NCBI RefSeq assembly: GCF_003918875.1
Contig: NW_025766625.1
Span: 868,001 to 932,000, forward strand
Origin: Haliotis rubra
Lineage: Eukaryota
Reading direction: 5' to 3'
Length of the DNA stretch: 64,000 nucleotides
In this document: positions 25,185 to 47,863 of the stretch, piece after piece
Layout: every line of letters begins with the position of its first letter
Position numbering within the stretch: the first letter of the stretch is position 1
Translations under genes and position numbers: made by a program
Notes under the pieces: model-generated
Told to the model about the DNA's origin: nothing
What the model saw: only the letters and a program-made list of their open reading frames with translations
Database searches by the model: none

Positions 25185-25392
25185 TGTTTTCTTACGAGCG
25201 TCCTTAGATGATGATACATGTATACACTGGTTGATAATTATTGGAGTCCTCTGCATCTCACACACACAAGACATGCTTTAGTACAACCATATCCAAACAT
25301 TCGTGTACCAGTACCTCGTGGGTGAGCACTGGTCCCCGGGATCTGATGCCTGTTGTAAACATCGAACATGTGGATCGACTGGTCATTACGTG

Positions 25393-25553
25393 TGTAGTGG
25401 CCATACAAATTCCGAGTCCCTTGCTGGGATTCGAACAATGGACCTTCTGATCCGAAGTCGGACGCCTTGTCCACCTGACCATAGAGGTTAACCCCGTCAG
25501 CAAGCTGACAAGGTAAGGATGTCATCTGTGGGATGACTCCACGCTCTGCTACA
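25393..25553 (-). mobile_element. 161-bp TG...CA element carrying a tRNA-Arg(TCG)-derived sequence, 4-bp TSD
   Basis: Termini TGTAGTGG...CTGCTACA flanked by CGTG on both sides (25389-25392, 25554-25557). Internal minus-strand TGGACAAGGCGTCCGACTTCGGATCAGAAGG...TTCGAATCCC. Second copy at 46139-46286. Confidence 0.75.
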
Positions 25554-25703
25554 CGTGCATCGTGTCCTGATGGCTTGAGATGTCGGTCCCCAAATCACTT
25601 GTTTGTCTGGTCCAGATTTGCAGGACGTCTTGATACACGTATACGTATACTATTGTTGATTCCCTAGCAAGCAGTAATTTGCTGTAACGTACTGAAAAGG
25701 AGA

Positions 25704-31165: not shown

Positions 31166-32455
31166 AAGCTGTCGACATTGTGTGTTAGTGTTGATGTTAG
31201 TCAGCTGAACTTGCCGTTAATACAAGATGTTTAAAGCTGTCGACATTGTGTGTTACTGTTGATGTTAGTCAGCTGGACTTGCCGTTAATACAAGATGTTT
31301 AAAGCTGTCGACATTGTGTGTAAGTGTCGATGTTAGTCAGCTGAACTTGCCGTTAATACAAGATGTTTAAAGCTGTCGACATTGTGTGTTAGTGTTGATG
31401 TTAGTCAGCTGAACTTGCCGTTAATACAAGATGTTTAAAGTTGTCGTTAGTCATTTGCCGTAATACAAGATGTTTAAAGCTGTCGACATTGTGTGTTACT
31501 CAGCTGAACTTGCCGTTAATACAAGATGTTTAAAGCTGTCGACATTGTGTGTTAGTGTTGATGTTAGTCAGCTGAACTTGCCGTTAATACAAGATGTTTA
31601 AAGCTGTCGACATTGTGTGTAAGTGTTGATGTTAGTCAGCTGAACTTGCCGTTAATACAAGATGTTTAAAGCTGTCGACATTGTGTGTTAGTGTTGATGT
31701 TAGTCAGCTGGACTTGCCGTTAATACAAGATGTTTAAAGCTGTCGACATTGTGTGTAAGTGTCGATGTTAGTCAGCTGAACTTGCCGTTAATACAAGATG
31801 TTTAAAGCTGTCGACATTGTGTGTTAGTGTTGGTGTTACTCAGCTGAACTTGCCGTTAATACAAGATGTTTAAAGCTGTCGACATTGTGTGTTAGTTTTA
31901 GTCAGCTGAACTTGCCGTTAATACAAGATGTTTAAAGCTGTTCGACATTGTGTGTTAGTGTTGGTGTTACTCAGCTGAACTTGCCGTTAATACAAGATGT
32001 TTAAAGCTGTCGACATTGTGTGTTAGTGTTACTCAGCTGAACTTGCCGTTAATACAAGATGTTTAAAGCTGTTGACATTGTGTGTTAGTGTTGATGTTAG
32101 TCAGCTGAACTTGCCGTTAATACAAGATGTTTAAAGCTGTCGACATTGTGTGTTAGTGTTAGTGTCGGCTGACTTGTTAGTCAAGCTGTTTAAAGCTTCG
32201 ACCGTTAATACAAGATGAACTTGCCGTTAATACAAGATGTTTGTCGACATTGTGTGTTAGTGTTGATGTTAGTCAGCTGAACTTGCCGTTAATACAAGAT
32301 GTTTAAAGCTGTCGACATTGTATGTTAGTGTTGGTGTTACTCAGCTGAACTTACCGTTAATACAAGATGTTTAAAGCTGTCGACATTGTGTGTTAGTGTT
32401 GATGTTAGTCAGATGACCTTGCTGTTGAAACTAGTTGTTTAAAGTTGTCGACATT
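31166..32455. repeat. Minisatellite, 68-bp unit, ~19 copies
   Basis: AAGCTGTCGACATTGTGTGTTAGTGTTGATGTTAGTCAGCTGAACTTGCCGTTAATACAAGATGTTTA; GTCGAC at 31171, 31239, and onward. Confidence 0.97.
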
Positions 32456-33104: not shown

Positions 33105-33342
33105 ACCCGTGAAGATCCGGGTTAGAATTGATCTTCAGAAACCCATGCTTGTTGTGAGAGGCGACTAACGGGATCGTGTGGTCAGGCTCGCCGACTTGGT
33201 TGACACATGTCATCGTCCCAATTGCGTAGATCGATGCTCATGCTGTTGATCACTGGATTGTTTGGTCCAGACTCGATAATTTACAGACTGCCGCCATATA
33301 GCTGAAATATTGCTGAGTACGGCTTTAAACAATCAACTAACC
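33105..33342 (+). mobile_element. SINE-like family B, full-length copy
   Basis: ACCCGTGAAGATCCGGGTTAGAATTGATCTTCAG...GAGGCGACTAACGGGATC...CCATATAGCTGAAATATTGCTGAGT tail. Confidence 0.9.
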
Positions 33343-34544: not shown

Positions 34545-36150
34545 AGAGGGATTAAGCAGAGCAAAAGTGGGGACTGAGCAAGATAGAGACGGGGATTAAG
34601 CAGAGCAGAAGTGGGGACTGAGCAGGGCAGAGACAGGGATTAAGCAGAGCAGAAGTGGGGACTGAGCAGGGCAGAGACAGGGATTAAGCAGAGCAGAAGT
34701 GGGGACTGAGAAGGGCAGAGACAGGGATTAAGCAGAGCAGAAGTGGGGACTGAGAAGGGCAGAGACAGGGATTAAGCAGAGCAGAAGTGGGGACTGAGCA
34801 GGGCAGAGACAGGGATTTAGCAGAGCAGAAGTGGGGACTGAGAAGGGCAGAGACAGGGATTAAGCAGAGCAGAAGTGGGGACTGAGAAGGGCAGAGACAG
34901 GGATTAAGCAGAGCAGAAGTGGGGACTGAGAAGGGCAGAGACAGGGATTAAGCAGAGCAGAAGTGGGGACTGAGCAGGGCAGAGACAGGGATTAAGCAGA
35001 GCAGAAGTCGGGACTGAGAAGGGCAGAGACAGGGATTAAGCAGAGCAGAAGTGGGGACTGAGAAGGGCAGAGACAGGGATTAAGCAGAGCAGAAGTGGGG
35101 ACTGAGCAGGGCAGAGACAGGGATTAAGCAGAGCAGAAGTGGGGACTGAGAAGGGCAGAGACAGGGATTAAGCAGAGCAAAAGTGGGGACTGAACAAGAC
35201 AGATACGAGAATTAGGAAGAGCAAAAGTGTGGACTAAGCAGGACAGATACGGGGATTAAGCAGAGCACAAGTGTGGACTAAGCAGGACAGATACGGGGAT
35301 TGAGCAAAGCACAAGTGTGGACTAAGCAAGACAGATATAGGGATTAAGAAGAGAAAACGTGTGGACTAAGCAAGACAGATACGGGGATTGAGCAGAGCAC
35401 AAGTGTGGACTAAGCAAGACAGATACGAGAATTAGGAAGAGCAAAAGTGTGGACTAAGCAGGACAGATACGGGGATTGAGCAGAGCACAAGTGTGGACTA
35501 AGCAAGACAGATACAGGGATTAAGAAGAGCAAAAGTGTGGACTAAGCAGGACAGATACGGGGATTGAGCAGAGCACAAGTGTGGACTAAGCAAGACAGAT
35601 ATAGGGATTAAGAAGAGCAAACGTGTGGACTAAGCAAGACAGATACGGGGATTGAGCAGAGCACAAGTGTGGACTAAGCAAGACAGATACAGGGATTAAG
35701 AAGAGCAAACGTGTGGACTAAGCAAGACAGATACGGGGATTAAGAAGAGCAAAAGTGTGGGCTAAGCAAGACAGATACAGGGATAAGAAGAGCAAAAGTG
35801 TGGGCTAAGCAAGACAGATACAGGGATTAGGAAGAGCAAAAGTGTGGACTAAGCAAGAAGGGATTACAGGGATTAAGAAGAGGAAGAGCAAAAGTGTGGG
35901 CTAAGCAAGACAGATACGGGGATTGAGAAGAGCACAAGTGTGGACTAAGCAAGACAGATATAGGGATTAAGAAGAGCAAACGTGTGGACTAAGCAAGACA
36001 GATACAGGGATTAGGAAGAGCAAAAGTGTGGACTAAGCAAGACAGATACCGGGATTAAGAAGAGCAAAATTGGGGATTGAGTAAGACAGATACGGGGATA
36101 AGCAGAGCAAAAATGGGGTTTGAATAAAACAGATACGGGGATTAAGTACA
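34545..36150. repeat. Purine-rich minisatellite, 44-bp unit (dimer of 22-bp subunits), two sub-arrays
   Basis: GGGATTAAGCAGAGCAGAAGTG-GGGACTGAGAAGGGCAGAGACA up to ~35190, then the variant GGGATTAAGAAGAGCAAAAGTG-TGGACTAAGCAAGACAGATAC(A/G). Degenerate copies at 36290-36445. Confidence 0.97.
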
Positions 36151-38279
36151 GAAAAAGTGAGATGTGATATTATCTACTTAACTATATATTCATTTATATT
36201 GCACCCCCTGCTACTGTATGTTAAATGTACTATAGGCCTACGGCCTCTTCAGTACTGTAAATAAAGATTGATTGATTGATTGATTGAAGTGAGGATTAAG
36301 CAAGGAAAAAGCAGGGACAAAGCAAGACGGAAACGGGGACTAAGCAAGATAAAACAGGAACTAAATAAGACAGAGACGGGGATTAAGCAAGACAAAACAC
36401 GGACTAAGCATGAGCAAGTCACGAAAAAGCTAAGAATTGGACTGAACAGTTTTCCCTGACACGGAAGTAAAAGTGCCGACACTGGAGCTTGCTTATTTAA
36501 GTTCTGTTATTCAATATTTATTTGTTTAAAAATAGAACGTTGGAACATTTATTGCAATCACATCGTACACGTGTTAACGTCTCCCCCACCGCTTTCCTCA
36601 GAATGAAAAAATACAATATATTTCTTAATTTATATAGTCAAGTTTGAAAAAATGAACATTTATGCCTTTACTGTTTCATCTCGAGATTGAAGGGTAAAAC
36701 TGACCAACCTTATTGCTGCGTCGACTAGCAATGGTGATGATAAGGAAGCCCGATGCTTTGAAATATATTAGCATAATAATTCTTCTGAAATACGATTGAA
36801 AAATTGTACAACGTACAAATGTGATCGAATGGTTTCTTAGTGATGAAGACGGGTTTGTAAACGAGATTCAAGAAAAATCTGAGAGGCCAGAATCGATTAA
36901 ATATGCTACATTTAACGCGTAAAACCAATTGTCACGAAGATGATTTTTTCCCCGTGTGGGCTGAAACGAATATGATTAGTCTGATTCACTTTTAACGATA
37001 TTAGACAGTTCTGCGCGTGACTTCCATGTGTTAACTTCTAGTTATTGGGTGTCACATTCCAACAGTATTACGTTACCCGACTTGTCTTCGCATTTCAACA
37101 AACTTTGTTTCTCACGAATTTGTAGGGAGGATCGACATATGTGTGTTTGTGTTTATAATGGTCAATACGTACGGTTGGAATTAAGTGTACAGCAGTACAG
37201 GAGTCCCCAGGAGTATGAAAATAACCTGTGACGACAAAGCTTTTCAGGCTCATAAATTGTATTCTCCTGAGGATGTTGTTCATGAGAATGCAAATTATAT
37301 AATATTTCCATCAATAAGGTTTGGGCATGTCTGATTTGAGTTTAGAACTACTGGAATCGAATCTCATTTATTGCAAATATTCCTACTACTAACGTTGTTG
37401 CTATATAACTGGTACAAAATGACAGAATAATTACACCCAAGTGTATTTTAACCACGGCAGCTCATCATAGTCCTGATTAAAAAACAATTTCACCAATAAT
37501 CAATATTCCTTGGTGATAATGTTACATTACCAAACATCAAATGTGGCCATCTATGTCCGCCAGACAATATACATTTTTAACATATACCGTTGTAATGAAT
37601 ACCGTTCCATACGGCCTCGTCCAATCTCAAGATCAATGAATTTGCTGGGAACATCACTTTGGTCACAATACCCAGACTACGTCTATTTGTTTCAATTTGT
37701 ACCATGTGTGAAAAATAAAACATAAAAATAGCAGAAAAACATGAGGCTGAATACACGAAACCTTTTGATATATTTGGGATTGAGTAAAGGGAAAGTGCAA
37801 TATAACGTATGCTACATTAAACAAGGAAGTGTAGAAAGATTTCAGTCTAACCTACTGGGACTGCCAATTAACTTGAGCCAAGTGCCCCTTTATGAAAGTT
37901 CGTTGGGGTGCAATTAAAGATGTACAGTACAGAGGTTATTTTATTCCGTGGGATAGGTGAGTACCGTCGTGGTCAGAGTGTTTAGGTTCTCAGTCAAGGT
38001 TCGCTTCCCAGTATGGCACATTGGTTGAAGTCCATGCGCTTCACGGTGATAATGTTAAGAGATGCTTAAAAGCCGACGGTTTTACCTTCCGGCACCCGGG
38101 GTGTCCGCGACCTGGCTCTCAGTGTGCACGGTTGTACTATCGATTTTCTGCTCGTGTTATCAGCCTTGAAGTAAGCTCCAGAGTGACTTTGAAGCGTTAC
38201 AATACGTCGCTGGACGATAAAGAATGAGAAATGACAATTTGGTGACCGGTGTTAACGTCAGGCAGTAACAAAGTCCAAT

Positions 38280-38908: not shown

Positions 38909-41119
38909 GTAAGAATTGTATTCTTGTAACTGGAAAGTAGCTTGATACCTGACTCTGTTAAATCTTTGGATACACGTTATTGCAAAGCATAAAGATATGA
39001 ACGTGTGTTTACCGACATAGGTTTAAGACATATATGAATCCTCTTCTTGTAAGACTTGGTACATGTATTACAGGAATAAACTTTGATCGGCAATGCAAGG
39101 AATGTTTGCCTGTAATTGAACGTAAGAGTTTCATTTAGAAACAAAATATCGCTTGAAAAACTGATACACGTGTATGTTTACAAAATGGGCTGAATATTCA
39201 AAGTGAGCACATTATCACGCCGGGACATTGATCAGCCCCAAGGTATATTCCCTGTTTTACTTTATGACAAGATTCCAATTGTCAAGGAGTGTGCTAAATA
39301 CCCCCTAGCCGTAGTTGTCACATCACCTTGCGGGATATTGTGCTGATGGTGTTTCCAGATTGGTTCCCTGTAAAGGCCCCGACTGAAAACATTCAACCAA
39401 TGCAAATTACCTTGGGAAAATGAGTATTTCTTTTTATTGATTAGTTTCTAAGTAAGCTAAACGGAATAGATAAAGCAGTATATGAAAAAATATTCCGATA
39501 TATTGTCACAGTTATATAAAGTTGTCGTAACTCCCCGTCAGTAGCAAACTTAACGAAGAATCTTGAAAAACCTATGAGTGTCCGCTGAATCATGATGCCA
39601 AGCACGTCTTCAGCGACGTGACAATTGACAGGTTCACCAAACTCACGCTTTTCCACATGTATTTCAACTAACTGATCTCTGGAGTGAGGAAGACGTGTTT
39701 CAAAGACGTTACAGTAACCATTATCACTATCAGATTTCACAGTATCCAAGATACACACGGGATGGCCTTAGTAGAAGTTAATAATTACAAATCTATATAG
39801 CACGTACAGGTATGCTAATCTATGTATAAACAAAGCATGATAGCAATGATTGGATGTGTAGCGAAATAAACTAAAATAAAGAACATTTGGACCGTGATGT
39901 TAAAATACTACGTATATTCTTGATAAAACCGTGTGACAAGAAAGGGGACTCTTTTAACATGTAAAGGTGAAAAAGGTCACATCCAAACTAATTTTGTGGT
40001 CAAGTGATGATAGCAGGATCCGGTACGTTAGTAAATAATATGCATCGAATCGTATTTACATTGAAAACTTCTGAAACCGTTTCTATGAACATGTGCACCA
40101 TTTTGGGGTGAAATATGATAACGCGTTCGGGATAAAGTTTAGAAAAAAATATGTTTGATTTTACAATCTGCTAATAAAAATTAATTTTGGATTAAGTTGA
40201 TCTGCTATTGCCGCTGATATTGCTGGTCTAGTGAGATTTGAACTTTCACGAACGTATTTCACTACGACCAGAATCCATGCACAGCATTCGTATCATGGTT
40301 TCAAAGATACGTGTGTATTTCGTGTCAGCAAAATTCCAGTGGTACTATAGCAATATAGCTTCAATTAAACCGTTAGTAAACTAGCCTGAGGTTTTGTTTA
40401 ATGAAACATTAGAAAGCACCATTTAATTGGATAGGCAGATTATTGCCTAATGCTGGTGTTATTCTAAAACATCATTATGAAATCAACTGAAATCATAAAC
40501 ACGGATGAAGAAATGCTCTTGGGTTTCCACGATGTAGTTTAAAATGACAGATTTGTTTATTCATTTGTCAGGTAGTCTAAGGAGGGAATTGACTTGTGGA
40601 TTTTATAATAACTAAAGGATCACACTTTCAATTTGCGGTATAACACGTTCACGAATATCACGAAGTTCTCTTTCTCTCGCTTTCCCATATACCCTCAAAT
40701 CCGTTAGCAGGACGTTTGATGCAGAATGAATGATTCCAAAAATATATGCATACTCGAAATATCTATTTATCATATAACGTCAACGTCATAAATTAACCAG
40801 TCTCACTTTTTCGCTTGAACAGATGTCTTTGAAAGTAAAAAGCAAAACAGGGCTCAAATAAACATGAAAAGATAATTGCAAATCAATTATTTCAGATGGG
40901 TAAACAGACAGATGAACACACCGACACACAAACACATCTAAAAAATGATTAAATGAAATTTACAACTCTGTCTAGTTATACGTCATCACGACGATTAATG
41001 GCATGGATCGAGAAGTACGTTACTTGACGGGATACAGTAATGACATATACGTCATATCGAACATAAGTGATGACATGAAGGCCTCTTCATGGTAAGATGG
41101 AAAATGTTTTCATGACGAC

Positions 41120-41353
41120 ATGTATTGACAACATGTGACGACTTCATGACGAGTTAGGGTAATGACATGTCTACCGGCCGTCAGGACACGTTCCGCATGT
41201 ATTGACAACATGTGACGACTTCATGCCGAGTTAGGGTAATGACATGTCTACCGGCCGTCAGGACACGTTCCGCATGTATTGACAATATATGACGACTTCA
41301 TGACGAGTTAGGGTAATGACATGTCTACCGGCCGTCAGGACACGTTCCGCATG
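41120..41353. repeat. 77-bp tandem repeat, 3 copies
   Basis: ATGTATTGACAACATGTGACGACTTCATG...GGACACGTTCCGC starts at 41120, 41197 and 41274. Confidence 0.95.
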
Positions 41354-42884: not shown

Positions 42885-44870
42885 CATCTTCTGACTACCC
42901 ATGCATCGTCACGTCTCATCTACTGACTACCGTACGTCGTCAGTATCATCATCTACTGACTATCGTACGTCGTCAGTATCATCATCTACTGACTACCGTA
43001 CTTCGTCAGTATCATCATCTACTGACTATCGTACGTCGTCAGTATCATCATCTACTGACTACCGTACGTCGTCAGTATCATCATCTACTGACTACCGTAC
43101 GTCGTCAGTATCATCATTTACTGACTATCGTACGTCGTCAGTATCATCATTTACTGACTACCGTACGTCGTCAGTATCATCATCTACTGACTACCCTACG
43201 TCGTCAGTATCATCATCTACTGACTACCCTACGTCGTGCGTGTCTTTATCTACCGTACGTCGTCCGTATCATCATCTGCTGACTACCCTACGTCGTCAGT
43301 ATCATCATCTACTGACTACCCTACGTCTTGCGTGTCTTTATCTACCGTACGTCGTCAGTATCATCATCTACTGACTACCGTACGTCGTCAGTATCATCAT
43401 CTACTGACTACCTTACGTCGTCAGTATCATCATCTACTGACTACCGTACGTCGTCAGTATCATCATCTACTGACTACCGTACGTCGTCAGTATCATCATC
43501 TACTGACTACCGTACGTCGTCAGTATCATCATCTACTGACTACCGTACGTCGTCAGTATCATCATCTACTGACTATCGTACGTCGTCCGTGTCTTTATCT
43601 ACCGTCTTTATCTACCGTCTTTATCTACCTTATGTCGTCCGTATCATCATCTACTGACTACCCTACGTCGTCAGTATCATCATCTACTGACTACCCTACG
43701 TCGTCCGTGTCTTTATCTACCGTACGTCGTCAGTATCATCATCTACTGACTACCGTACGTCGTCAGTATCATCATCTACTGACTACCGTCGTCTACCGTA
43801 CGTCGTCAGTATCATCATCTACTGACTACCGTACGTCGTCAGTATCATCATCTACTGACTACCCGTACGTCGTGACACCGTACGTCGTCAGTATCATCAT
43901 CTACTGACTATCGTACGTCGTCCGTGTCTTTATCTACCGTGTCTTTATCTACCTTATGTCGTCCGTATCATCATCTACTGACTACCCTACGTCGTCAGTA
44001 TCATCATCTACTGACTACCCTACGTCGTCCGTGTCTTTATCTACCGTACGTCGTCAGTATCATCATCTACTGACTAGCGTACGTCGTCAGTATCATCATC
44101 TACTGACTACCTTACGTCGTCAGTATCATCATCTACTGACTACCGTACGTCGTCAGTATCATCATCTACTGACTACCGTACGTCGTCAGTATCATCATCT
44201 ACTGACTACCGTACGTCGTCAGTATCATCATCTACTGACTATCGTACGTCGTCCGTATCATCATCTACTGACTATCGTACGTCGTCCGTGTCTTTATCTA
44301 CCGCACGTCGTCCGTATCATCATCTGCTGACTATCCGTAAGTGGTCCGAGTCATTATCACTCATATATTGCCACGTCATTATGTGCTTACTGTCACTGTC
44401 ATCTACTGAATAGCCGTACGTCATCATTGTCATCGTCTATTGAGTAGCTGTACGTCGTGACGTAATCATCTACTGATTACCCTTACGTCTTCACGTAACC
44501 ATCTACTGACTACCCGTACGTCTTCACGTAATCATCTACTGACTACCCGTACGTCTTCACGTGACCATCTACTGACTACCCGTACGTCTTCACGTAACCA
44601 TCTACTGACTACCCGTACATCTTCACGTAATCATCTTCTGACTACCCGTACGTCTTCACGTGACCATCTACTGACTACCCGTACGTCTTCACGTAACCAT
44701 CTACTGACTACCCGTACGTCTTCACGTAACCATCTACTGACTACCCGTACGTCTTCACGTGACCATCTACTGACTACCCGTACGTCTTCACGTAACCATC
44801 TACTGACTACCCGTACGTCTTCACATAATCATCTACTGACTACCCATACGTCGTTACGACATTATGTATT
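42885..44870. repeat. CpG-rich 33-bp minisatellite, two related sub-arrays
   Basis: CATCATCTACTGACTACCGTACGTCGTCAGTAT at ~42915-44335, with shorter GTGTCTTTATCTACC variant units; CATCTACTGACTACCCGTACGTCTTCACGTAAC at ~44465-44855. Confidence 0.97.
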
Positions 44871-46019: not shown

Positions 46020-46138
46020 CAGATATTCGCGAAAAGGGCAAGTAAACCTGCCCTACCGGTAGCAGTCGCCCTTCACACAATTTGCCTATAAACGTAAGTA
46101 TTTACAAACAACGCCACTCAGTACTCCTGCCATGCACA

Positions 46139-46286
46139 AGTAGCAGGGCGTGGAGTTATCCCACAGATGACATGCTTACTGACGGGGTTAACCTCTTTGG
46201 CCATGTGGACAAGGCTTCTGACTTCGGATCAGAAGGTCCGTGGTTCGAATCCCAGCACGGGACTCGGAAATTTTATGGCCGCTACA
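46139..46286 (+). mobile_element. Second copy of the tRNA-Arg(TCG)-carrying TG...CA element
   Basis: (A)GTAGCAG...CCGCTACA termini; internal TGGCCATGTGGACAAGGCTTCTGACTTCGGATCAGAAGGTCCGTGGTTCGAATCCC; colinear with 25393-25553 except for a 13-bp indel. Confidence 0.75.
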
Positions 46287-47863
46287 CAAAGGTGGCCTGT
46301 AAACAAACCACAAACGTGATGGACAAGCGTTTAATGATGGATTTCAACAGCAAACAATTAATTGAGAAAATAGTGTACAATGTCCCACACAGCGTCTACA
46401 CCTAAGCCGTTTTTTGAAATCACCCTTGACACGCCCATGTCAACTGTGCTGTTTCCAAGAGGGTTACCAAGGTAACTGACAAGAATGAGTGTTAGTTAGA
46501 AATGACGATCTTTCAACGAATATGAGGTCTTGCCTACTCTGGTGAATGTAGGTACAGATATGTCAAGTGCGAGGTCTCGTCTACTTGACTCGCTTGATCA
46601 ATGATAATTGAAATTCTGCAACATATTAGAAATGTTTCGGACAGTATGCAGAGTTTTATAACCATGTTCAAAGAAAAAATACCTTAACACAATGGACTTT
46701 GTCATTCTGTATAGCTTTTCATGTACGTTTTCTTCACCCGCAGGCGATTCAATGTTATACCCAAGTCGGTACGATGAAGTATAGATATCTTGATTGTCAA
46801 TGAACATGCCCATGTATGTAGACATAACACGTATTCTTGTATTTTTTCCTTACTTCCGTGCCTTGTTAAAACCTTCTTTGAATTCATTTGTCTCAGGAAG
46901 TAATAAAATCATTGTATGTACAACGTGAGATGGTCGTTTCATTAATATATGATGTTTATTTGAAAGACCCACATTCCTGCCTAACAATTCCTTCCTCCAT
47001 CTATAGTTGCGATGTCATGATGGCAGGTACTTGATGTAGCACTTACAATTAAATTTTCATAAGTTGCCCTCCTATGAATATACAAAACAGCCCACAGCAT
47101 TGCCTCTTTTTACAGCGAGATTAGCTATCAGAATGGAACAATGGACATTCGAGCAGCAAATCAAAGTCGCTTAACCTTATCTGTCGAAAAGCTGCTACAA
47201 CGCATGGCATTATAACGAGGTTCTTCCTCGGTCTCACATTGACTCATTACACAATTCCAGGGTTTCAAATTAAATTTAAGCTTCAGCGCACAAACTGCAA
47301 ACGTATCACATGATAACATATTTGGCGAAATCTTGGGGGAGAGATTTGTCTCCCTTTATTTCTTCCCTTGCATAAAACTAAGCTGTCAGCAGCCTGATAT
47401 CGGATGAAATGCTCAAATTTGAGAGGTTATAACCCTTTATGTTGGGTGATCATCAGAAGTAAAGGTTTTCATTTTTTGTCAGTGAGGCGTTTCTGGCTTT
47501 CATTTTATCTTTCGCGTTTTTATCGATCAAATCTATCCGAAATTATAACCAGTCAACCAACGGGGAGGCTGTTTGATGAAAGAAGAGAACATTTGTCATA
47601 ATGAACAGCCCTTTCCGTCCCTACCATTTTGTCCATCTACACATTTCTCATTAGCGGGTGCGTGTGATTGTTCATTAAGCTCTTCAAGTAGGCATTTGTT
47701 TCATTGGGATGTTTTATTACCCCACAATTAACACTTCTTTTTGTTGTTGTAAGAATAGATTACAACTGTGTCATGAGCATGTGTTAATGAATCACTATCA
47801 GATAGTGATAATGATACGAGTTCGCGAAAAGGTGAGCATATCCTGACACACCTGTGTCACATG

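What the first reader, a model, noticed from the sequence alone, without database searches (positions are those of the whole stretch)
25389..25557. Miniature TG...CA element carrying a tRNA-Arg(TCG) Pol III unit: candidate tRNA-bearing solo LTR/TRIM
Seen: two copies (25393-25553 minus, 46139-46286 plus) share sequence both upstream and downstream of a tRNA-Arg(TCG)-like core that retains the D-arm, the CTGACTTCGGATCAG anticodon arm and the GTTCGAATCC B box but has a broken acceptor stem. Homology stops at short inverted termini TGTAG...CTACA. The first copy has a perfect 4-bp TSD (CGTG); the second has CACA/CAAA. There is no LINE-type or simple-repeat tail, and the tRNA is internal, unlike a SINE. 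Established: TG...CA ends with 4-6-bp TSDs mark integrase-type insertion, and plant Cassandra TRIMs carry 5S rRNA Pol III promoters in their LTRs. Inference: this is an animal analogue using a tRNA promoter inside a very short LTR, or a Ginger-like TGT...ACA MITE with a captured tRNA.
Basis: partly seen in the sequence, partly recalled or inferred. Interest (0 to 1): 0.75.

Follow-up and report, generated by a model that had tools for sequence, protein, structure and literature searches.

The report
Abalone mini-retrotransposon LTRs carrying a tRNA relic
The two 161-base elements are leftover end-repeats (solo LTRs) of a roughly 428-base non-coding retrotransposon, abundant in this abalone genome, that carries a decayed arginine-tRNA gene in each end-repeat; this kind of element was already described in 2024 under the name Helenus, so this is a new family of a known kind.

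Summary

- **Window copies:** both (25393-25553 minus, 46139-46286 plus) are solo LTRs. The family gave 1226 first-look candidates in this 1.38-Gb genome, which earlier scan notes call blacklip abalone.
- **Full elements elsewhere:** LTR (161 bp), internal region (105-107 bp), LTR. The internal region opens with an 18-19-nt primer-binding site perfectly complementary to the genome's own tRNA-Lys(CTT). It ends in a GGGGG(A/T)G polypurine tract.
- **Insertion signature:** 31 of 41 sampled elements have perfect 4-bp target duplications. The target consensus is palindromic, WTG|CWWG|CAW.
- **LTR core:** it derives from tRNA-Arg(TCG), with A box, B box and a T4 run, but is not a functional tRNA.
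- **Published kind:** this matches Helenus/TRIMp3 (Kojima 2024, PMC10886601). That paper lists only pteriomorph bivalves among molluscs and no Arg-TCG-derived LTR.
- **New here:**
  - This is the first gastropod family.
  - It has a different tRNA source.
  - A candidate Ty3/Gypsy partner (8.5 kb) shares its primer site, polypurine end, LTR termini, duplication length and target preference.

Two first-reader notes elsewhere in this genome flagged the same family.

The parts
25393..25553 (-). Copy A: complete solo LTR (161 bp, TGTAG...CTACA) of the tRNA-Arg-bearing TRIM
   Evidence: It is 93% identical to LTRs of full elements. The homology edges coincide with those of the genome-wide copies.
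25554..25557 (-). Copy A upstream target-site duplication (CACG in element orientation)
   Evidence: The flank gATG|CACG fits the family's target consensus WTG|CWWG.
25389..25392 (-). Copy A downstream target-site duplication (CACG in element orientation)
25414..25488 (-). Copy A tRNA-Arg(TCG)-derived core (LTR positions 66-140). It includes the A-box-like TGGTCAGGTGG (25471-25481) and the B-box-like TGTTCGAATCC (25427-25437, first G changed).
25405..25409 (-). Copy A remnant of the T run. It reads TTTGT here and TTTT in most copies.
46139..46286 (+). Copy B: older solo LTR (148 bp) with a 13-bp deletion and its first base changed T to A
   Evidence: It is 83-88% identical to reference LTRs.
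46135..46138 (+). Copy B upstream target-site duplication (CACA)
   Evidence: It differs by one base from the downstream copy.
46287..46290 (+). Copy B downstream target-site duplication (CAAA)
46191..46268 (+). Copy B tRNA-Arg(TCG)-derived core, with A box TGGCCATGTGG (46198-46208) and B box GGTTCGAATCC (46242-46252)
46271..46274 (+). Copy B TTTT run just downstream of the tRNA-like core

Best explanation
Both window copies are solo LTRs of a non-coding LTR retrotransposon in miniature (TRIM) of the Helenus/TRIMp3 kind. A full element is about 428 bp: LTR (161 bp), then T plus an 18-19-nt site that binds the 3' end of the host tRNA-Lys(CTT), then about 70 nt of leader, then a GGGGG(A/T)G polypurine tract plus TA, then the second LTR.

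Shown here:
- The element architecture.
- The exact fit of the primer site to the host tRNA.
- 4-bp target duplications and a palindromic target consensus, both typical of integrase.
- The tRNA-Arg(TCG) origin of LTR positions about 66-140.
- The loss of tRNA function in that segment.
- Solo LTRs and three-LTR tandems, as expected from LTR-LTR recombination.

Inferred with good support: the element has no genes of its own and is copied by the proteins of a Ty3/Gypsy family. One copy of that family is at C2661:157543-166019: 8477 bp, 818-bp LTRs, gag-protease-RT-RNase H-integrase. It shares exactly the cis sites those proteins need, namely the primer site, the polypurine end, the first 10 and last 6 bases of the LTR, the 4-bp stagger and the target preference.

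Inferred only (about even odds): the tRNA relic supplies an internal RNA polymerase III promoter (A box at LTR 73-83, B box at 117-127). Transcription would start near LTR position 60-66, read through the weak T4 run of the 5' LTR, and stop at the T4 run (146-149) of the 3' LTR. This gives a genomic RNA of about 355 nt with an R region of about 85 nt and a 12-nt U5.
For: - Architecture and PBS/PPT.
- Primer-site fit: the own tRNA-Lys(CTT) genes end ...GAGCCCCACGTTGGGCG, whose complement with CCA added is the PBS.
- TSDs: 31 of 41 perfect and 3 with one mismatch; none of the 41 elements shows a 3-, 5- or 6-bp duplication.
- Target consensus: WTG|CWWG|CAW.
- Activity span: LTR pairs within elements are 89-100% identical, so activity was long-running and recent.
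- tRNA origin.
- Loss of tRNA function.
- Promoter-like motifs: of 67 sampled LTRs, 49 keep TGGTCATGTGG, 50 keep GGTTCGAATCC and 46 keep TTTT. The three young elements checked have TTTT only at LTR 146-149, and no AATAAA or TATAWA.
- No coding capacity.
- Partner: shared GGGGGTGTA|TGTAGCAGGG...GCTACA and PBS+CTG; domain order; 4-bp TSDs on 4 of 5 complete solo LTRs of the Gypsy family. Four other LTR-element families with the same PBS do not share the termini.
- Published kind with the same features, including 4-bp TSDs and Gypsy partners in animals: PMC10886601.
Against: - Pol III use is therefore untested.
- A T4 run sits inside the 5' LTR and would stop much Pol III transcription after about 90 nt.
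- The A box departs from the usual TRGCY (it reads TGGTC).
- The partner copy examined has its pol split over several frames, and its own flanks do not match (AACT/GCAT). No intact source element was shown.
- Shared short termini and PBS argue for partnership but do not prove it.
- The organism name rests on earlier scan notes, not on my own test.
Confidence: 0.85

Rival explanations
1. It is the same TRIM, but its genomic RNA is made by RNA polymerase II, from a promoter in the first 60 nt of the LTR or by read-through from host genes. On this reading the tRNA relic is a passenger, or serves another role such as TFIIIC binding or a chromatin boundary, or an RNA processing or packaging signal.
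For: The T4 run inside the 5' LTR should end most Pol III transcripts early. The tRNA-like part no longer folds as a tRNA. Ordinary TRIMs manage without Pol III promoters (PMC10886601).
Against: The element has no TATA box and no AATAAA. The A and B boxes and the single T run are kept in most copies. The same design recurs independently in Cassandra, Ajax and other Helenus lineages.
Confidence: 0.4
2. It is an ordinary tRNA-derived SINE mobilised by a LINE.
For: It has a tRNA-derived core with A and B boxes and is short. Haliotis is known to hold MESC SINEs, a superfamily whose head in Littorina derives from tRNA-Arg (PMC4758252).
Against: The tRNA part is internal, about 65 nt from the 5' end. 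There is no A-rich or repeat tail. The duplications are fixed at 4 bp. The unit occurs as direct terminal repeats around a PBS/PPT-bearing core.
Confidence: 0.01
3. It is a Ginger-like or other cut-and-paste MITE with TGT...ACA ends that captured a tRNA.
For: It has short inverted termini TGTAGC/GCTACA and a 4-bp TSD.
Against: Two-LTR and three-LTR forms with a tRNA primer site and a polypurine tract are the retrotransposon design. The termini, PBS and PPT are shared with a Ty3/Gypsy element.
Confidence: 0.01
4. It is a 268-bp satellite or tandem repeat that happens to contain a tRNA pseudogene.
For: Tandem Repeats Finder reports period 268-271 arrays of 2.6 copies.
Against: In the sample, arrays never exceed three LTRs, always begin and end with a complete LTR, and are flanked by 4-bp duplications. 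Most copies are dispersed singles or pairs. Short three-LTR arrays are also reported for Cassandra and for the Helenus family LTR-11_DR.
Confidence: 0.01

Closest known systems
[quoted passage not shown]
   Same: It has two short LTRs, a PBS and a PPT, and no genes. The LTR carries a tRNA-derived core that keeps box A and box B but is not a functional tRNA. It makes 4-bp TSDs as in animal Helenus. Some bivalve Helenus also use a tRNA-Lys primer. Its partner is of Gypsy type, and it forms solo LTRs and short tandem arrays. Its size (428 bp) lies within the published range of 311-1263 bp.
   Different: The host is a gastropod; the paper lists only pteriomorph bivalves among molluscs and has no mention of Haliotis or Gastropoda. 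The tRNA source is Arg(TCG); the string cttcggatcag is absent from all the published Helenus sequences held. The PBS matches the primer over 18-19 nt, against about 12 nt in the bivalve examples shown. [quoted passage not shown]
Cassandra (plant TRIM with 5S rRNA sequence, Pol III promoter and terminator in its LTRs)
   Same: It has a small-RNA gene relic with an internal Pol III promoter and a T-run terminator inside each LTR. Short LTR-internal-LTR-internal-LTR arrays occur.
   Different: Cassandra carries 5S rather than tRNA and lives in plants. According to PMC10886601, its Pol III transcription is experimentally supported and its TSDs are 5 bp rather than 4 bp.
tRNA-derived SINEs (SINE2), including the molluscan MESC SINEs, whose head in Littorina derives from tRNA-Arg (PMC4758252)
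   Same: It has a tRNA-derived A/B-box segment, is a short non-coding element in high copy number, and may share the source of the tRNA relic (SINE insertion into an LTR is Kojima's proposed origin).
   Different: It has no LINE-type tail, a fixed 4-bp TSD, an LTR/PBS/PPT design, and is mobilised by an LTR element rather than a LINE.
Plant retrozymes (TRIM-like elements with hammerhead ribozymes in their LTRs)
   Same: It is a non-coding LTR element whose LTRs carry a small structured-RNA module and do not resemble the partner's LTRs overall.
   Different: No ribozyme was found: Rfam at E up to 10 gives only weak tRNA hits. There is no evidence of circular RNA.

Membership tests
TRIM (terminal-repeat retrotransposon in miniature) | Two short direct terminal repeats (about 100-300 bp) with TG...CA ends around a short internal region, under about 1 kb in total | tested here: met
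   LTRs are 161 bp, the internal region 105-107 bp and the total 425-430 bp in 12 or more elements.
TRIM (terminal-repeat retrotransposon in miniature) | A primer-binding site next to the 5' LTR and a polypurine tract next to the 3' LTR | tested here: met
   The PBS TGGCGCCCAACGTGGGGC(T) is the complement of the genome's own tRNA-Lys(CTT) 3' end plus CCA. The PPT reads GACGGGGG(A/T)GTA directly before TGTAG.
TRIM (terminal-repeat retrotransposon in miniature) | No coding capacity | tested here: met
   There is no Pfam domain. One sense frame is stop-free in some copies but not in others.
TRIM (terminal-repeat retrotransposon in miniature) | Short target-site duplications of fixed length | tested here: met
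   The 4-bp TSD is perfect in 31 of 41 elements and has one mismatch in 3. None of the 41 elements shows a 3-, 5- or 6-bp duplication.
Helenus / TRIMp3 (Kojima 2024) | A tRNA-derived sequence inside the LTR | tested here: met
   Alignment to the genome's own tRNA-Arg(TCG) gene scores 46, against 14.3 +/- 2.2 for shuffles. Rfam tRNA hits fall in every LTR at 16-17 bits.
Helenus / TRIMp3 (Kojima 2024) | Conserved box A (TRGCY...YGG) and box B (GGTTC) | tested here: met
   The A-box region TGGTCATGTGG occurs in 49 and the B box GGTTCGAATCC in 50 of 67 sampled LTRs. Box A reads TGGTC, one base off TRGCY.
Helenus / TRIMp3 (Kojima 2024) | Animal members make 4-bp TSDs and resemble Gypsy elements at the PBS | tested here: met
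Helenus / TRIMp3 (Kojima 2024) | Transcription from the Pol III promoter (the meaning of 'p3') | not testable with these tools
The paper itself says this is unproven for Helenus.
Functional tRNA-Arg(TCG) gene | Cloverleaf with an intact acceptor stem and T stem, scoring above the model threshold | tested here: not met
   ARAGORN finds none. Rfam gives 16-17 bits against a threshold of 29, over model positions 8-63 only. The fold is no better than shuffles, z = -0.89.
tRNA-derived SINE (SINE2) | tRNA head at the 5' end, a LINE-derived or A-rich/simple-repeat tail, and variable-length TSDs | tested here: not met
   The head is internal, there is no tail, and the TSD is fixed at 4 bp.
MITE / Ginger-type DNA transposon | Terminal inverted repeats as the only terminal structure, with no PBS/PPT and no direct terminal repeats | tested here: not met
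   Direct LTRs with PBS and PPT are present.

The most novel reading that the evidence does not exclude
This would be an independent, gastropod-specific birth of a Pol III-driven LTR element: a tRNA-Arg gene or SINE head with its T-run was captured into the LTR of a Gypsy-dependent TRIM. It would also be the first animal case with the autonomous partner pinned down by shared integrase and priming sites. That would give a directly testable pair in which a Pol III transcript is reverse-transcribed and integrated by the proteins of a Pol II-transcribed Gypsy element.
Probability: 0.35. Interest if true: 0.5.

Novelty: new member of a known kind. Interest (0 to 1): 0.3.

Why it matters
The finding matters mainly for annotation and for transposon biology. 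The family scatters on the order of a thousand tRNA-Arg-like, A/B-box-bearing sequences through an abalone genome. These can be mistaken for tRNA pseudogenes or SINEs, and they may recruit TFIIIC or Pol III near genes. It extends Helenus/TRIMp3 from bivalves to gastropods with a different tRNA source, which supports repeated independent origins of this design. The candidate Gypsy partner shares the LTR ends, PPT and PBS. That gives a concrete pair for studying how a gene-less element hijacks an autonomous one, a link reported only at the PBS level for animal Helenus. It does not open a new category.

Tried and rejected
2. Partner search by junction spacing: I looked for LTR-PBS and PPT-LTR junctions several kb apart. 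The candidates on C2795, C2313 and C2506 turned out to be segmental duplications carrying TRIMs, not long elements.
I went on with small fetches.
4. A first Gypsy family with the same PBS was considered as partner and rejected (C330, C935, C2522; LTR ...GTCTTACA). Its LTR start (TGTGACG) and PPT (AGGAGGGG) differ from the TRIM's.
5. Three loci with a TRIM-like internal region but odd upstream sequence (L085, L066, L078) were checked as possible tRNA-less ancestors. They are old rearranged copies.
6. The stop-free sense frame across the 428-bp element has no domain, is broken in most copies, and is judged to be chance.
7. The Cassandra PNAS 2008 paper is not held, so I used PMC7215508 instead.
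8. Repbase and Dfam could not be queried, so whether this exact abalone family is already deposited is unknown.
9. No consensus of the TRIM or of the Gypsy element was built. Only natural copies were compared; the short consensus lines printed automatically by the alignment tool were not used.

Full report
**1. Observation**

Copy A (25393-25553, minus strand) and copy B (46139-46286, plus strand) align from TGTAG to CTACA and not beyond.
- Copy B is 148 bp. It has a 13-bp deletion, its first T is changed to A, and its flanks are CACA/CAAA.

A search of the window's own genome (G000, 1.38 Gb, 2855 contigs) with copy A plus flanks gave 1226 first-look candidates. In nearly all of the 68 scored matches homology begins and ends at the same two bases, query 13-173. 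The window holds no other fragment of the family. ARAGORN and Rfam at gathering threshold find no tRNA in the window.

**2. What it is**

Many genomic copies sit in pairs or triplets with a 266-271-bp period. Reading two of them shows the anatomy.
- Directly after ...GCTACA comes T, then TGGCGCCCAACGTGGGGCT.
- Directly before the next TGTAGCAG comes GACGGGGG(A/T)GTA.
- The genome's own tRNA-Lys(CTT) genes form tandem arrays of about 300-bp period on C692 and C2098, confirmed by ARAGORN. They end ...GGTTCGAGCCCCACGTTGGGCG.
- With CCA added, their 3' end is the exact complement of that 18-19-nt site.

So the spacer is an internal region with a primer-binding site and a polypurine tract, and the 161-bp unit is an LTR. 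In thirteen two-LTR elements examined, ten were parsed cleanly. In eight of those ten the internal region is 105-106 bp. Their LTR pairs are 89-100% identical, so the family has been active for a long time and until recently.

**3. Insertion signature**

I sampled 41 distinct elements with complete outer ends: solo, two-LTR and three-LTR forms.
- 31 have a perfect 4-bp duplication and 3 have one mismatch.
- None shows a duplication of 3, 5 or 6 bp.
- An offset control matched once.
- The seven exceptions are truncated elements, an old copy, or the odd class described under loose ends.

The target consensus is palindromic about the 4-bp stagger: A/T at -3, T at -2 (28 of 34), G at -1 (22), C at TSD1 (22), G/A at TSD4, C at +1, A at +2 (24), A/T at +3. 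In short, WTG|CWWG|CAW. That is the signature of a symmetric integrase complex. Both window copies fit it (gATG|CACG and cATG|CACA).

**4. The tRNA relic**

A pattern search for the anticodon arm found one real tRNA-Arg(TCG) gene (L036:134-208, ARAGORN). All other hits examined were LTR copies.
- The LTR aligns to that gene from the D arm through the T loop: 82% over 45 nt, score 46 against 14.3 +/- 2.2 for shuffles.
- Weaker likeness extends to the 5' acceptor strand and to the 3' trailer with its T run.
- Rfam's tRNA model matches each LTR at only 16-17 bits (threshold 29), over model positions 8-63.
- The segment does not fold as a cloverleaf, and its folding energy is no better than shuffles.

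So it is a dead tRNA that keeps an A-box-like TGGTCATGTGG (LTR 73-83), a perfect B box GGTTCGAATCC (117-127) and TTTT at 146-149. Of 67 sampled LTRs, 49, 50 and 46 respectively keep these. In the three young two-LTR elements checked, that is the only T4 run, and there is no AATAAA and no TATAWA. Copy A has a weakened B box (TG for GG) and a broken T run; copy B keeps both.

**5. Candidate autonomous partner**

The exact 18-nt PBS occurs 93 times in the genome and 0 times in the reversed control. Of the roughly 43 sites not already matched to a TRIM LTR-PBS junction, 40 were fetched. Nine of these are further, mostly degraded, TRIM copies. The rest belong to several other LTR-element families.

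Only one of these families also shares the TRIM's ends.
- Its LTR begins TGTAGCAGGGTGG (TRIM: TGTAGCAGGGCGTGG) and ends CCCGGCTACA (TRIM: GGCCGCTACA).
- Its PPT-LTR junction GGGGGTGTA|TGTAGCAGGG is identical over 19 nt to that of TRIM copies such as L004.
- The PBS plus the next two bases (CTG) are shared.

One copy, C2661:157543-166019, is 8477 bp with 818/817-bp LTRs that are 99.4% identical. Its open frames carry PNMA-type gag, aspartyl protease, RVT_1, RNase H, and integrase H2C2 plus rve core, in the Ty3/Gypsy order. The pol region is split over several frames in this copy.

Of five complete solo LTRs of this Gypsy family, four have perfect 4-bp duplications (TTGA, CTAG, TATG, CATG) and one has a single mismatch. 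Their flanks resemble the same WTG|CWWG target.

A second Gypsy family with the same PBS (C330 and others) differs at the LTR start and PPT and was set aside.

The shared features are exactly the cis sites that reverse transcriptase and integrase need, while the rest of the LTRs are unrelated. That is what is expected of a parasite and its provider. It remains an inference.

**6. How it most likely works**

*Shown:* it is a gene-less LTR element primed by tRNA-Lys(CTT) and inserted with a 4-bp stagger at a palindromic target. It later decays by LTR-LTR recombination to solo LTRs (the two window copies) or grows to three-LTR tandems.

*Inferred (about even odds):* the tRNA relic acts as an internal Pol III promoter.
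- Transcription would start near LTR 60-66, pass the four-T run of the 5' LTR at some frequency, and end at the same run in the 3' LTR.
- The RNA would be about 355 nt, with R of about 85 nt and U5 of 12 nt. This is enough for the first strand transfer.
- Every solo LTR, including copy B in the window, would remain a potential transcription unit of about 90 nt.

The main rival is Pol II or read-through transcription, with the relic as a passenger or with another role. The premature terminator in the 5' LTR is the chief argument for that rival. No RNA data could be obtained.

**7. Comparison with what is known**

Kojima (2024, PMC10886601) defined Helenus as TRIMs with a tRNA-derived sequence in the LTRs and grouped them with Cassandra and Ajax as TRIMp3.
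- He reports them in fungi, one plant and six animal phyla.
- Animal members have 4-bp TSDs, PBS-level similarity to Gypsy elements, conserved A and B boxes, mostly non-functional tRNA parts, solo LTRs and tandem arrays.
- Their lengths range from 311 to 1263 bp.

The abalone family meets every definitional feature I could test.

In Mollusca the paper lists only five pteriomorph bivalve orders. Neither Haliotis nor Gastropoda appears in the text or supplement. The Arg(TCG) anticodon-arm string is absent from all the published Helenus sequences held. This is therefore a new family in a new host class with a different tRNA source, most simply an independent origin.

The MESC SINE superfamily, whose head in Littorina derives from tRNA-Arg, is also present in Haliotis (PMC4758252). 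Kojima's proposed route, SINE insertion into a TRIM LTR, is therefore possible. The likeness to the tRNA gene's 3' trailer hints instead at capture of a gene or primary transcript. This is unresolved.

Cassandra shares the promoter-plus-terminator-in-LTR design and the short three-LTR arrays.

**8. Earlier notes of this scan**

Two first-reader notes on other pieces of this genome (s1-339841, a 414-bp TRIM; s1-349502, a 362-bp miniature LTR element) describe the same family. Neither had a follow-up. The organism name, blacklip abalone, comes from follow-up notes on other windows. I did not verify it.

**9. Loose ends**

Three loci carry elements that end in LTR plus TTGGCG(C/T)CCAAC. This is the spacer T plus the first 11 nt of the PBS, equal to the tRNA's acceptor 3' strand plus CCA. 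Unrelated flank follows, without a clean TSD. This may reflect aberrant cDNA ends that kept the plus-strand copy of the primer. It was not tested.

**10. Verdict**

The MITE alternative is rejected. The element is a new member of a known kind, of modest interest.

Noticed in passing
L033:764-935 and L033:2655-3093 (C2489:1475559-1477900); L031:1778-2180 and L031:7872-8308 (C2795): Some elements end in LTR plus TTGGCG(C/T)CCAAC (spacer T plus 11 nt of the tRNA-Lys PBS), then unrelated flank, with no clean 4-bp duplication. Two of them face each other 1.7 kb apart. They may be aberrant cDNA ends that kept the copy of the primer tRNA.
   Followed up: partly
41 sampled insertion sites, including window 25389-25557 and 46135-46290: The target-site consensus around the 4-bp duplication is palindromic, WTG|CWWG|CAW. 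The candidate Gypsy partner's solo LTRs show the same preference.
   Followed up: yes
G000:C2098:1021659-1048992 and C692:22607-28031 (L041-L044): There are long tandem arrays of tRNA-Lys(CTT) genes at a period of about 300 bp: 97 exact matches to the 3' half, and 7 genes called in 3 kb by ARAGORN. This tRNA is the primer for this TRIM and for at least five other LTR-element families.
   Followed up: partly
L066-L105: At least five distinct LTR-retrotransposon families in this genome carry the identical 18-nt tRNA-Lys(CTT) primer-binding site, with different LTR ends and leaders.
   Followed up: partly
L051 (C330:210450-216300), L045-L050: A second Ty3/Gypsy family has the same PBS (LTR about 447 bp, ...GTCTTACA). 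The C330 copy repeats with a 5752-bp unit and lacks the RT domain between gag and RNase H. Two quite different LTR variants share the last 14 nt or so.
   Followed up: partly
L031 (C2795:275500-285499), L032 (C2313:310500-319500): Segmental duplications of 1-1.6 kb, about 6 kb apart, each carry a TRIM copy together with its flanks. They mimic long elements when only the junction spacing is examined.
   Followed up: yes
L004:1508-1933 and other two-LTR copies: One sense reading frame is stop-free across the whole 428-bp element in four of twelve two-LTR copies examined. LTR plus internal is 267 bp, or 3 x 89. It has no Pfam domain and is judged to be chance.
   Followed up: yes
window 31166-32455, 34547-36159, 41119-41353, 42916-44854: Several minisatellite arrays lie between the two solo LTRs: 68-bp period (about 19 units in all), 44-bp period (36.5 units), 77-bp period (3 units) and 33-bp period (59 units).
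   Followed up: no
window 33105-33175: An earlier first-reader note (s1-349445) flags a SINE-like family with a structured 5' end here. I did not examine it.
   Followed up: no
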